The position numbers and the translations under genes were made by a program. Of a stretch of 64,000 nucleotides of DNA, positions 38,531 through 40,731 are shown one piece after another. The notes beneath the pieces are model-generated. The model ran no database searches. It was given only the letters and a program-made list of their open reading frames with translations, and was not told where the DNA came from. Within the stretch, counting starts at the first letter, position 1; each line of letters starts with the position of its first letter. The DNA comes from Octopus bimaculoides (taxonomy: Eukaryota): assembly GCF_001194135.2 (NCBI RefSeq), contig NC_068986.1:91044813-91108812 (forward strand), given 5' to 3'.

Positions 38531-40731
38531 TGTGTGCACATACACACACTTCTAATATGTATAAATTCTAATATATGTATATATATATTATATTATATTA
38601 TATTATATACACAAAGAATAATCATTATTAAATATCTAAAAGTGGTGAGCTGATAGAATTGTTATCACGCTGGGCAAAATGCTTAGCAGTGTTTCAACCA
38701 TCTTTACGTTCTGAGTTCAAATTCTGCTGGGGTCGACTTTGCCTTTCGTCTTTTCAGGGTCAATAAAATAAATACCAGTTAAGCGGTGGGAGGAGGAAGC
38801 AGAGGTCAATGTAATTGACTTACCCTCTCCCCCAAATTTGCTGACTTTGTGTCAAAATTTGAAACCATTATTAAACATTCGGTATAATGTCAAGCTTTTG
38901 ATTGGAAATGACCCATGCAATATTTTCTATTAAAATTATTCAGCAGACACACAGGGGAAAGCAAGGTAGAGATGATGGTTATTGTTGATGTTGATATTTA
39001 ATTCTATATGAACCTTGATTGGGCAGATCTATGCTCAAAGGCATTTCCATCTGTTACCAACCTGTATTTTTGTATATCTAGGACCTAATTGTCCAATATG
39101 TCTTCTCTTTTTTTAAGCTGGCCAGGTGTAATTTGAGGGAGATTTGGCTGCTATTTCTAATGGGGCAAGTGACTACACAGAAGTTCTCTCATTAGTTCAT
39201 GAATGGTGGTAGTTGTTGAATATTAAAATTAAGGAAGGAAATAAATTAGTTTTTCTTCAGTGTATGACTAATTTAGAAGTGTAACCTTTTCTGTTTCAGC
39301 CCTGATGTTTGGTTCAATATCAGTGTGATGGGTGGGCTTCAAGTTATGGAGATGCCACTGTTGAAAACCTGGATTCATACCCATGTCAAAGAAGGAATCA
39401 CCAAAGGTTAGTATTGACTATTATACACCCATTATAGTTTCTTAAAATACTTCATTAGCTGTGCCACCATTTTGAGTTGGAGCTGAAATTCGGTCAAAGC
39501 TGACTATATTCTTCACTATACTGGTGTTTATGAGTTAAATTACAAATAAAACTTACAAATGGATCTATTTCATTCTCTTTCTCTACACACTTCATTTTAA
39601 TTATTCTTATCCCCTTCTTTTTCACTCTATCATTTTGTTATAGTGCTTTCCACATAATCTTTTCTCATACCCTCTGCAAGCTCTCTTTTCTCCTACTTTT
39701 TGTCACTATTTATTTATGTCACATATAAGCCTAACATTCAGCAACGCTAAATGTTAGGCTCATATGTATCAGCATATATTAGATACCATTTTTTAAAATT
39801 ATATGTCCTAGCAATACAAATAAAAGCGATATCAGGAAAAGATGTCCTGTGGTAAAATATAAAAATGAAGAAACAGAAAAGAAAAATAGAAACATAATGA
39901 CATTCAAGAAATTCTTCAATGAATGTTTTATCCTAGATATTTTTCTTCAATATTTTGTTTCCTACTCACCCTTTAACACGAACCTTTCATTCCTTTTCCA
40001 GCTCTGGTTGATCCAGCAAAGCTGGATGTTAGTCTTGCCTCTGTTGGACCAGTCCAGTATCAACGCTCTATGGTGAAACGACAGTGTGGTGAGTTTCTGG
40101 TATTCTATTTCTCTAGTAATTTTCCATTGTACCTGATTTCATTCTATACTTGTTAAACAACAAGGTCAGTGGGATGCTGAATAATTTTAATAGAAAATAT
40201 TGCATGGGTCATTTCCAATCAAAAGCTTGACATTATACCGAATGTTTAATAATGGTTTCAAATTTTGACACAAAGCCAGCAAATTTGGGGGAGAGGGTAA
40301 GTCAATTACATTGACCTCTGCTTCCTCCTCCCACCGCTTAACTGGTATTTATTTTATTGACCCTGAAAAGACGAAAGGCAAAGTCGACCCCAGCAGAATT
40401 TGAACTCAGAACGTAAAGATGGTTGAAACACTGCTAAGCATTTTGCCCAGCGTGATAACAATTCTTCATCTCACCTGTGTTGATAAAATAAAATTCTATT
40501 AAAGTACTGAAGTCAATGGTGTCCCTCTTGGCTAAAATTGCTGACCTTGTGCCTAAATTAGTATGCACGATGAAATGCTTTGCGGTATTTCACCTGTCAC
40601 TACATGCTGAGGTCAACTTTGCCTTTCTTCCTTTTGGGGTTGATAAATTAAGTACCAGTGAAATACTGGGATCAATGTAATCAACTAGTCCCCTCCCCCA
40701 AAATTGCTGCCCTTCTGGCAGAATCTGAAAC

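What the first reader, a model, noticed from the sequence alone, without database searches (positions are those of the whole stretch)
38655..40465. 291-bp near-perfect inverted duplication brackets coding exons 4-5: candidate circRNA / exon-skipping / dsRNA switch
Seen: the arms are reverse complements with 1 mismatch in 291 bp, far more similar than any other SINE pair here. They include ~75 bp of non-SINE flank, so this is a local inverted duplication, not two independent insertions. The 1229-bp spacer holds exactly exons 4 and 5 (194 nt). Joining exon 3 to exon 6 shifts frame and reaches TGA early in exon 7. Established: complementary intronic flanks promote back-splicing and exon skipping, and long dsRNA is an ADAR substrate; coleoids edit RNA extensively. 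Inference: the stem could yield a 194-nt circRNA, an NMD-sensitive skipped isoform, or both, tuning this lipid-transfer protein.
Basis: partly seen in the sequence, partly recalled or inferred. Interest (0 to 1): 0.8.

Follow-up and report, generated by a model that had tools for sequence, protein, structure and literature searches.

The report
Young inverted intronic duplication bracketing two exons
A 291-base piece of one intron of an octopus lipid-transfer gene was recently copied backwards into a nearby intron by DNA repair, so the pre-mRNA could fold into a long hairpin around two coding exons, but available RNA data show only normal splicing.

Summary
Arms 38655-38945 and 40175-40465 are reverse complements with one mismatch in 291. 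Each arm carries most of a SINE plus 71 bp of unique flank, and the 1229-bp spacer holds exactly two coding exons (107 + 87 = 194 nt).

It is not a mis-assembly. Contigs built separately from each DNA run, in four samples from four studies, cross the breakpoints. The shared unique part has about twice single-copy depth.

The right arm is the derived copy. Three related species have an empty site there (...GGTCAG CTTTGCCT TTCATCTCACC...). The insertion removed 8 bp, added a 5-nt filler (TGGGA) and shows no target-site duplication or tail. A 9-of-10 match lies next to its outer junction and was already present in the empty site. This fits a microhomology-primed, templated inverted insertion rather than retrotransposition.

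The functional reading is unsupported. In mRNA-type libraries all 44 exon-3 donor reads join exon 4, all 25 exon-5 donor reads join exon 6, and no back-splice appears. Introns have no coverage, so editing is untestable. No rRNA-depleted run could be found, so a circRNA is not excluded.

Verdict: a real, young, probably neutral structural variant with latent dsRNA and circRNA potential. It is a new member of known kinds, of modest interest.

The parts
38655..38945 (+). Left arm, the ancestral source copy: most of a SINE plus 71 bp of unique intron-3 sequence.
   Evidence: 291 nt, 1 mismatch. In related species the unique flank 38884-38945 is contiguous with 38946-39298.
38644..38874 (+). SINE copy inside and just outside the left arm. 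It has an ATT-type 3' end, and the family is abundant in this genome.
   Evidence: Other copies in the window align to 38638/38644-38873/38883 at 68-86% identity. DNA depth is 10^4-10^5.
38875..38945 (+). Non-SINE unique flank included in the duplication.
   Evidence: Depth is about twice single-copy depth in four samples. No other match in the window.
38844..38844 (+). The only difference inside the arms (A here; the partner 40276 reads as G after complementing).
   Evidence: The shared contig starts at 38845 in X1, X2 and X7 and ends at 40275 in X3, so both variants exist in each sample.
40175..40465 (-). Right arm: the derived inverted copy, inserted in intron 5, 86 nt downstream of the exon 5 donor.
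   Evidence: Absent from contigs of related organisms B, C and D, which run from the left flank (aligned up to 40157) to 40465 with about 18 nt between. Junction-crossing contigs are found in organism A samples.
40170..40174 (+). 5-nt filler TGGGA at the inner junction of the insertion. It replaces the ancestral 8 nt CTTTGCCT.
   Evidence: Empty-site sequences, compared with the window sequence.
40466..40475 (-). Ancestral target sequence. Its reverse complement GGTGAGATGA matches the source flank GGTGAGCTGAT (38644-38654). This is the putative priming homeology.
   Evidence: Alignment. The sequence is present in the empty site of B, C and D. Chance estimate about 0.002.
40163..40572 (+). Old, degenerate, 5'-truncated SINE fragment on the + strand that served as the target; now split by the right arm.
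   Evidence: The reconstructed ancestral site aligns to SINE copies in two collinear blocks at 76-78% identity. Organism E reads GGTCAGCTTTGCCTTTCT|TCTCACC.
36452..36574 (+). Exon 3 by window numbering; part of the SMP domain.
39300..39406 (+). Exon 4, 107 nt, inside the loop.
   Evidence: RNA junction reads and mRNA contigs.
40002..40088 (+). Exon 5, 87 nt, inside the loop.
   Evidence: RNA junction reads and mRNA contigs.
42345..42395 (+). Exon 6.
   Evidence: Unaligned read ends after 40088 match its start with agreement 1.0. tblastn mapping.
45132..45134 (+). TGA reached if exon 3 is joined to exon 6. It lies 121 nt before the end of exon 7.

Best explanation
This is a real, young, lineage-specific structural variant in an Octopus genome.

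What happened (inferred). A DNA break or stalled fork arose in an old SINE fragment in intron 5 of a tricalbin-like SMP + C2 lipid-transfer gene. Repair copied 291 nt from about 1.5 kb upstream, in inverted orientation. The copied piece was most of a SINE plus 71 bp of unique intron-3 sequence. The 3' end ...GGTGAGATGA of the broken bottom strand annealed to the near-identical GGTGAGCTGAT at the 5' edge of the upstream SINE. It was extended through 38655-38945. The new strand was then joined to the other break end by end joining, with a 5-nt filler and loss of 8 bp.

What is shown. The right arm is derived. The site is empty in related species. There is no target-site duplication and no tail. 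The homeology already existed at the target. The deletion and the filler are visible in the sequence.

Consequence. The event created a 290-bp perfect RNA stem in the pre-mRNA (in silico) that loops out exons 4-5. The steady-state mRNA is nonetheless spliced canonically (shown). The variant is most likely neutral or nearly so.

Expected by-products. By analogy with other inverted-repeat-flanked exons and with ADAR-rich coleoid tissue, I expect hyper-editing of the intronic stem and at most low-level circRNA. Neither has been demonstrated.
For: - Repeat anatomy.
- Real DNA: contigs cross both inner junctions in X1, X2, X3 and X7 (236-nt contig 38916-39151; 1073-nt contig 39132-40204). They cross both outer junctions in X3 and X7 (38584-38684; 40436-40598).
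- Depth: the shared unique contig has about twice single-copy depth. Values are 34 vs 12.1/13.6, 83.8 vs 40.7/43.6, 80.1 vs 32.6/39.3 and 20.1 vs 6.9/13.9.
- Spread: thirteen organism A DNA runs from nine samples hold 4/7 or 7/7 of the sampled words around the inner right junction.
- Empty site: single contigs in organisms B and D run from the left flank (aligned up to 40157) to 40465 with about 18 nt between. The sequence before 40465 reads ...AACAAGGTCAGCTTTGCCT in B and C, with GGTTAG in D. Organism E reads ...GGTCAGCTTTGCCTTTCT|TCTCACC.
- Target: it is an old + strand SINE fragment.
- Homeology: chance of the junction-adjacent match is about 0.002.
- Age: arm divergence is 1/291 = 0.34% (95% CI 0.01-1.9%). 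Orthologous intron sequence differs by about 4% between organism A and B/C/D (16/430 and 24/588).
- RNA stem: the 1811-nt segment folds at -815 kcal/mol with 290 of 291 cognate pairs. The two arms alone fold together at -534.7 kcal/mol.
- Canonical splicing only.
- Taxon and gene.
Against: - The priming register is off by one base: the source T38654 is absent from the copy. The homeology could therefore be chance (post hoc p about 0.002), or a later indel occurred.
- An RNA-templated origin is not excluded. In that case a reverse-transcribed fragment of intron-3 pre-mRNA was captured at the break.
- I did not see the left SINE itself in the related species, only its 3' flank.
- 'Neutral' rests on mRNA-type libraries with about 40 junction reads per junction and on contig sets. 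Effects of a few percent, tissue-specific effects, NMD-masked skipping, or circRNA that these libraries fail to capture would all be missed.
- Short-read contigs cannot phase the spacer orientation or assign the mismatch to an arm.
Confidence: 0.8

Rival explanations
1. The stem acts as a functional RNA-level switch. It produces a 194-nt circRNA, an NMD-targeted exon 4-5-skipped isoform, or both, and so tunes the level of the lipid-transfer protein. ADAR editing modulates stem strength.
For: - The geometry is favourable: a 290-bp perfect stem lies 354 nt upstream of the exon 4 acceptor and 86 nt downstream of the exon 5 donor.
- Skipping gives a frameshift and a premature stop 121 nt before the next exon junction.
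- Inverted repeats of 30-40 nt suffice for circularisation in human-gene minigene assays (PMC4201285).
Against: - 0 of 44 exon-3 donor reads skip (95% upper bound 6.6%).
- No exon 3-to-6 contig in X30, where the exon 3-to-4 contig has depth 338.
- No back-splice is reported, against 38 linear exon 4-5 junction reads and four mRNA contigs.
- The variant is young and absent from sister species, so it cannot be a conserved regulatory device.
- SINE copies of the opposite orientation inside intron 5 can compete for the right arm (pairs I2-I5).
Confidence: 0.12
2. Assembly artefact. Only one copy exists, and the second arm and the mismatch come from a mis-join or a heterozygous SNP.
For: The assembly is gap-rich, with 11 runs of N. 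It shows an obvious gap-closure duplicate at 40931-40976 / 40987-41032.
Against: - Independent contigs from four samples in four studies cross the junctions.
- The shared part has about twice single-copy depth.
- The contig breaks exactly at the mismatch in every sample.
- The right arm has its own unique flanks, which are adjacent in related species.
Confidence: 0.02
3. Retrotransposition. The right arm is a new SINE insertion that carried 71 bp of 3' flank (3' transduction). A variant of this idea is two independent SINE insertions later homogenised by gene conversion.
For: Homology seems to reach the SINE 5' end at 38644, as expected for a full-length transcript.
Against: - The outermost 10 nt of that homology are ancestral target sequence, present in the empty site. 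The copy therefore starts inside the SINE.
- There is no target-site duplication and no ATT or A-rich tail at the 3' end.
- Instead there is an 8-bp target deletion and a 5-nt filler.
- The source sequence has no run of T at the copy's 3' end (38945) that would end a Pol III transcript; T-runs lie earlier, near 38896 and 38922.
- Gene conversion cannot explain the non-homologous 71-bp flank or the empty site.
Confidence: 0.04
4. DNA-level role. The arms act as substrates for recombination between inverted repeats, which flips the 1229-bp spacer. This would create an allele with exons 4-5 inverted, a reversible knock-out or an inversion polymorphism.
For: 291 bp of near-identity is ample for recombination between the arms. 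Short-read contigs cannot tell the two spacer orientations apart, because each arm joins both spacer ends through identical sequence.
Against: mRNA from every RNA run examined reads exons 3-4-5-6 colinearly on one strand. There is no positive evidence for a flipped allele.
Confidence: 0.03

Closest known systems
Exons flanked by intronic inverted repeats that circularise (human inverted Alu pairs at ZKSCAN1 and HIPK3, Drosophila laccase2, mouse Sry)
   Same: Reverse-complementary sequences lie in the two introns that flank internal exons with normal splice sites. The stem is far longer and more perfect than the 30-40 nt shown to suffice (PMC4201285). From my own knowledge, Sry is likewise flanked by long near-perfect inverted repeats.
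   Different: No back-splice junction has been observed here. The repeat is not a pair of independent transposon copies but one templated duplication that includes unique DNA. It is confined to one species lineage.
Templated insertions and inverted duplications from microhomology-mediated template switching or DSB repair (MMBIR/FoSTeS-type events, templated inverted insertions at breaks)
   Same: The template lies nearby and the copy is inverted. One junction has short imperfect homology. The other has a filler and a small deletion. There is no target-site duplication (compare PMC8421209 and PMC11724301).
   Different: At 291 bp it is much longer than the 5-34 bp inverted insertions reported at yeast DSBs (PMC11724301). 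It is a germline event that appears fixed or common in the species. The mechanism is inferred from junction sequence alone.
ADAR hyper-edited intronic dsRNA formed by inverted repeat elements
   Same: A long, nearly perfect intramolecular duplex is predicted in a pre-mRNA of a coleoid. In octopus most A-to-I editing occurs in introns and 3' UTRs, consistent with the hairpin substrates found there (PMC9699675).
   Different: Editing could not be tested, because no reads cover the unique parts of the arms.
Alternative splicing coupled to NMD (frameshifting cassette exons)
   Same: Skipping the 194 nt would shift the frame and give a stop more than 50 nt upstream of a downstream exon junction.
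   Different: The skipped junction is not seen (0 of 44 reads; no contig in X30).

Membership tests
Inverted-repeat-driven circRNA locus | Reverse-complementary sequences in the introns flanking the circularised exon(s) | tested here: met
   291 nt with 1 mismatch. 290 cognate pairs form in the minimum-free-energy fold.
Inverted-repeat-driven circRNA locus | The enclosed exons have a functional upstream acceptor and downstream donor | tested here: met
   AG|39300 and 40088|GT are used in linear mRNA.
Inverted-repeat-driven circRNA locus | Back-splice junction reads (40088->39300) | tested here: not met
   None reported in X24, X41 and X42 (raw reads) or X30, X36 and X38 (contigs). The libraries are mRNA-type, so power is low.
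Inverted-repeat-driven circRNA locus | RNase R resistance / lack of poly(A) | not testable with these tools
   No rRNA-depleted or RNase R run could be found.
Templated inverted insertion (microhomology-mediated template switch / DSB repair) | The inserted DNA is a copy of a nearby template and is the derived state | tested here: met
   Empty site in organisms B, C, D and E. The flank of the source copy is ancestral.
Templated inverted insertion (microhomology-mediated template switch / DSB repair) | Microhomology or homeology at a junction | tested here: met
   A 9-of-10 match with one bulge lies next to the outer junction and pre-existed at the target. Chance about 0.002. The register is off by 1 nt.
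Templated inverted insertion (microhomology-mediated template switch / DSB repair) | End-joining scars at the other junction (filler, small deletion), no target-site duplication | tested here: met
   TGGGA filler and loss of CTTTGCCT.
SINE retrotransposition (with or without 3' transduction) | Target-site duplication and a 3' tail; the copy starts at the element's 5' end | tested here: not met
   No duplication and no tail. The apparent 5' extension is ancestral target sequence.
ADAR hyper-edited dsRNA | Clusters of A-to-G mismatches in RNA reads over the arms | tested here: inconclusive
   Depth is zero over the unique arm parts 38888-38949 and 40128-40189. Mismatches in the SINE parts come from reads of other copies and run in all directions.
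AS-NMD cassette | Skipping creates a premature stop more than 50 nt upstream of an exon junction | tested here: met
   TGA at 45132-45134, 121 nt before the end of exon 7.
AS-NMD cassette | The skipped junction is observed in RNA | tested here: not met
   0 of 44 reads, and no contig in X30. NMD could mask it.
SMP-domain lipid-transfer protein (tricalbin / extended-synaptotagmin type) | SMP domain plus C2 domains | tested here: met
   The O. sinensis orthologue P0003 scores 45.3 bits for PF25669 (cut-off 35) and 152.5 bits for C2. The window fragment alone scores 29.9 bits. The gastropod orthologue is named tricalbin-like.

The most novel reading that the evidence does not exclude
The insertion is a natural gain-of-stem experiment. 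In this Octopus species, but not in its sister species with the empty site, the new 290-bp perfect stem would produce a species-specific 194-nt circRNA from a tricalbin-like gene, or an intronic dsRNA that is heavily ADAR-edited or diced into small RNAs. That would allow a direct in vivo test, in an ADAR-rich animal, of how a single new inverted repeat changes back-splicing, skipping and editing.
Probability: 0.3. Interest if true: 0.5.

Novelty: new member of a known kind. Interest (0 to 1): 0.3.

Why it matters
If the stem has RNA consequences, the locus offers a clean comparison between species. Closely related octopuses carry the same gene, the same exons and the same introns, with or without one 291-bp inverted copy. 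Any circRNA, skipping, editing or small-RNA signal could then be assigned to that single change.

As it stands, the main value is as a well-resolved example of a germline templated inverted insertion. Both junctions and the ancestral empty site are known. It is also a caution that a striking inverted repeat around exons does not by itself change the mRNA.

Tried and rejected
I used narrow stretches and unaligned read ends instead.
- The word-indexed protein search with 64 aa found nothing. With 122 aa it found only one unnamed JGI fragment. The exhaustive HMMER search gave the orthologues.
- A search for rRNA-depleted RNA runs listed none.
- Raw 2026 DNA runs (X21-23) are sampled at about 1 in 100, so unique regions had almost no depth.
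- Rfam gave only sub-threshold microsatellite matches, and tRNA scanning found nothing.
- The look-up of the O. sinensis gene locus failed because the product is not on record.
- A first attempt to read the empty site with a 48-nt stretch failed for B, C and D, because their contigs ran past the end of the stretch. Adding 16 nt of the arm solved it.
- Rejected readings: mis-assembly, independent SINE insertions with gene conversion, and 3' transduction. The reasons are given under the rival explanations.
- Pfam did not support my recollection that the C-terminus of model P0002 looks like a mariner transposase.

Full report
**Observation**

The arms are 38655-38945 and 40175-40465, 291 nt each, separated by 1229 nt. 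They differ at one position, 38844 A against the complement of 40276. Identity collapses at the inner ends. At the outer end, ten further bases align with one mismatch and one indel, giving 302 bp at 99.0%. Other copies of the same SINE in the window are only 68-86% identical to the arm. The next-best repeat pair of 60 bp or more in the whole window is 91% over 237 bp. SINE homology stops near 38874-38883. DNA depth drops from 10^4-10^5 to near single-copy level over 38888-38971.

**Gene context**

The + strand carries a gene whose exons map to an Octopus sinensis protein, XP_036359565.1 (P0003). That protein is 99% identical over the 122-aa query. It has an SMP lipid-binding domain (PF25669, 45.3 bits, above the cut-off) and C2 domains. 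A gastropod orthologue is named tricalbin-like. The window is therefore from an Octopus species, and 'lipid-transfer protein' is a fair description.

RNA reads and mRNA contigs fix these exons:
- exon 3: 36452-36574
- exon 4: 39300-39406
- exon 5: 40002-40088
- exon 6: 42345-42395
- exon 7: 45122-45255

The spacer holds exactly exons 4 and 5 (194 nt). Joining exon 3 to exon 6 shifts the frame and reaches TGA at 45132-45134. The exon numbers count only exons seen in the window. The first ~106 residues of the orthologue did not map to it.

**Is it real DNA?**

The assembly is gap-rich and contains at least one obvious gap-closure duplicate (family D4), so an artefact was a serious possibility. 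It can be excluded on the following evidence from contigs built separately from each sequencing run.
- In four organism A samples from four studies (X1, X2, X3, X7), contigs cross both inner junctions: a 236-nt contig over 38916-39151 and a 1073-nt contig over 39132-40204.
- In X3 and X7, contigs also cross both outer junctions (38584-38684 and 40436-40598).
- The contig that both arms share (38845-38945, the same sequence as 40175-40275) has roughly twice the depth of its single-copy neighbours. The values are 34 vs 12.1/13.6, 83.8 vs 40.7/43.6, 80.1 vs 32.6/39.3 and 20.1 vs 6.9/13.9.
- That contig stops exactly at the mismatch, so both variants exist in each sample.
- Thirteen organism A DNA runs from nine samples hold 4/7 or 7/7 of the sampled words around the inner right junction. 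This fits a fixed or very common variant, although the word sampling is coarse.

**Origin**

Contigs of related species give the polarity. In organisms B and D, one contig runs from 39936-40157 directly to 40465-40558 with about 18 nt in between. The unique flank of the left arm is contiguous with 38946-39298.

The empty-site sequence reads as follows:
- Organisms B and C: ...AACAAGGTCAG CTTTGCCT | TTCATCTCACC...
- Organism D: the same, with GGTTAG in place of GGTCAG
- Organism E: ...GGTCAGCTTTGCCTTTCT | TCTCACC...
- Organism A (the window): ...GGTCAG TGGGA [arm] TCATCTCACC...

So 290-291 nt were inserted, 8 nt were lost and 5 nt of filler were added. There is no target-site duplication and no tail. 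The target is itself an old, degenerate + strand SINE fragment.

The ten bases of 'extra' homology at the outer end are ancestral target sequence. The reverse complement of the target, GGTGAGATGA, happens to resemble GGTGAGCTGAT at the 5' edge of the upstream SINE. The chance of this is about 0.002, estimated post hoc.

The simplest reading is a templated inverted insertion primed by microhomology. This is the class of event described for MMBIR-type template switching and for DSB repair (PMC8421209, PMC11724301). The 3' end of the broken bottom strand annealed at that homeology, copied 38655-38945, and was joined to the other end by end joining. The mechanism is inferred from junction sequence. 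The register is off by one base (source T38654 is missing), and capture of a reverse-transcribed intron fragment cannot be excluded.

Retrotransposition with 3' transduction does not fit these facts. Neither do independent SINE insertions followed by gene conversion.

The arms differ by 0.34% (95% CI 0.01-1.9%). Orthologous intron sequence differs by about 4% between organism A and B/C/D. The event is therefore recent relative to that split, unless gene conversion keeps the arms alike.

**RNA consequences**

In silico, the 1811-nt segment folds with 290 of the 291 cognate pairs at -815 kcal/mol. The two arms alone fold together at -534.7 kcal/mol. The stem sits 354 nt upstream of the exon 4 acceptor and 86 nt downstream of the exon 5 donor. 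This geometry is more than sufficient by the standards of minigene work (PMC4201285).

The data I could reach show only linear splicing.
- Exon 4-5 junction: 10, 10 and 18 reads in the three raw runs X24, X41 and X42, plus mRNA contigs in X30, X36 and X38.
- Exon 5 donor: all 25 reads continue into exon 6, with agreement 1.0.
- Exon 3 donor: all 44 reads continue into exon 4, with agreement 0.98-1.0. The 95% upper bound for skipping is 6.6%.
- In X30 the exon 3-to-4 contig has depth 338. The only other contig leaving exon 3 runs into the unspliced intron, at depth 4.5.
- No 40088->39300 joint was reported in any of these runs.

There are limits to this evidence. Intronic depth over the unique arm parts is zero, so these are mature-mRNA libraries. 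Editing of the stem cannot be assessed, circRNA would be under-represented, and NMD could remove a skipped isoform. No rRNA-depleted run could be found. [quoted passage not shown] This makes hyper-editing of the stem the most likely molecular fate, but that is inference.

**Verdict**

It is now refined to a derived, templated inverted insertion with both junctions and the empty site resolved. The 'switch' interpretation has no support in the available data and is implausible as an evolved regulator, given the variant's youth. Production of some circRNA or edited dsRNA remains a reasonable, testable expectation. The locus is a new member of known kinds: inverted-repeat-flanked exons and templated insertion structural variants. 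Interest is modest. Its appeal is as a natural with-and-without comparison between sister octopus species.

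Noticed in passing
window 40931-41032: 40931-40976 and 40987-41032 are 100% identical direct copies on either side of the 10-N gap at 40977-40986. This looks like a gap-closure artefact in the assembly (family D4).
   Followed up: no
window 40019 (exon 5): A-to-G in 4 of 14 reads of RNA run X41, against 0/19 in X24 and 0/21 in X42. It would change AAG Lys to GAG Glu. 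It could be an editing site or a SNP in that animal.
   Followed up: no
window ~39096-39200 (intron 3, between left arm and exon 4): A very high-copy repeat, with DNA depth about 10^5 and clear RNA coverage. Many reads show a 'goes back 35' joint at 39159->39125, so other copies differ in structure.
   Followed up: no
window 39720-39766 (intron 4): A small stable hairpin, -25.7 kcal/mol, z-score -5.8 against shuffles. The only Rfam match there is a chance-level miRNA hit.
   Followed up: partly
window 19314-19550 and 43408-43644: The second-best repeat pair in the window is also inverted: 91% over 237 bp, 24 kb apart, bracketing six mapped exons of the same gene.
   Followed up: no
window 54718-54996: The 484-aa protein model P0002 (100% identical to the window over the 122-aa query) ends in 93 aa that are absent from the O. 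sinensis orthologue, which continues at 56228-56320 instead. This is probably an annotation that reads into intronic repeat sequence. From memory the stretch looks like a transposase, but Pfam gives no hit.
   Followed up: partly
window 36545-36600: In RNA run X30, a 343-nt contig at depth 4.5 continues from exon 3 into intron 3. The spliced contig has depth 338, so the unspliced form is about 1%.
   Followed up: no
window 39383-40000: Two reads of X24 carry GAGAAGAAGGAATCACCAA in place of the last 21 nt of exon 4 before the exon 4-5 junction. This could be a sequencing or alignment oddity, or a paralogue.
   Followed up: no
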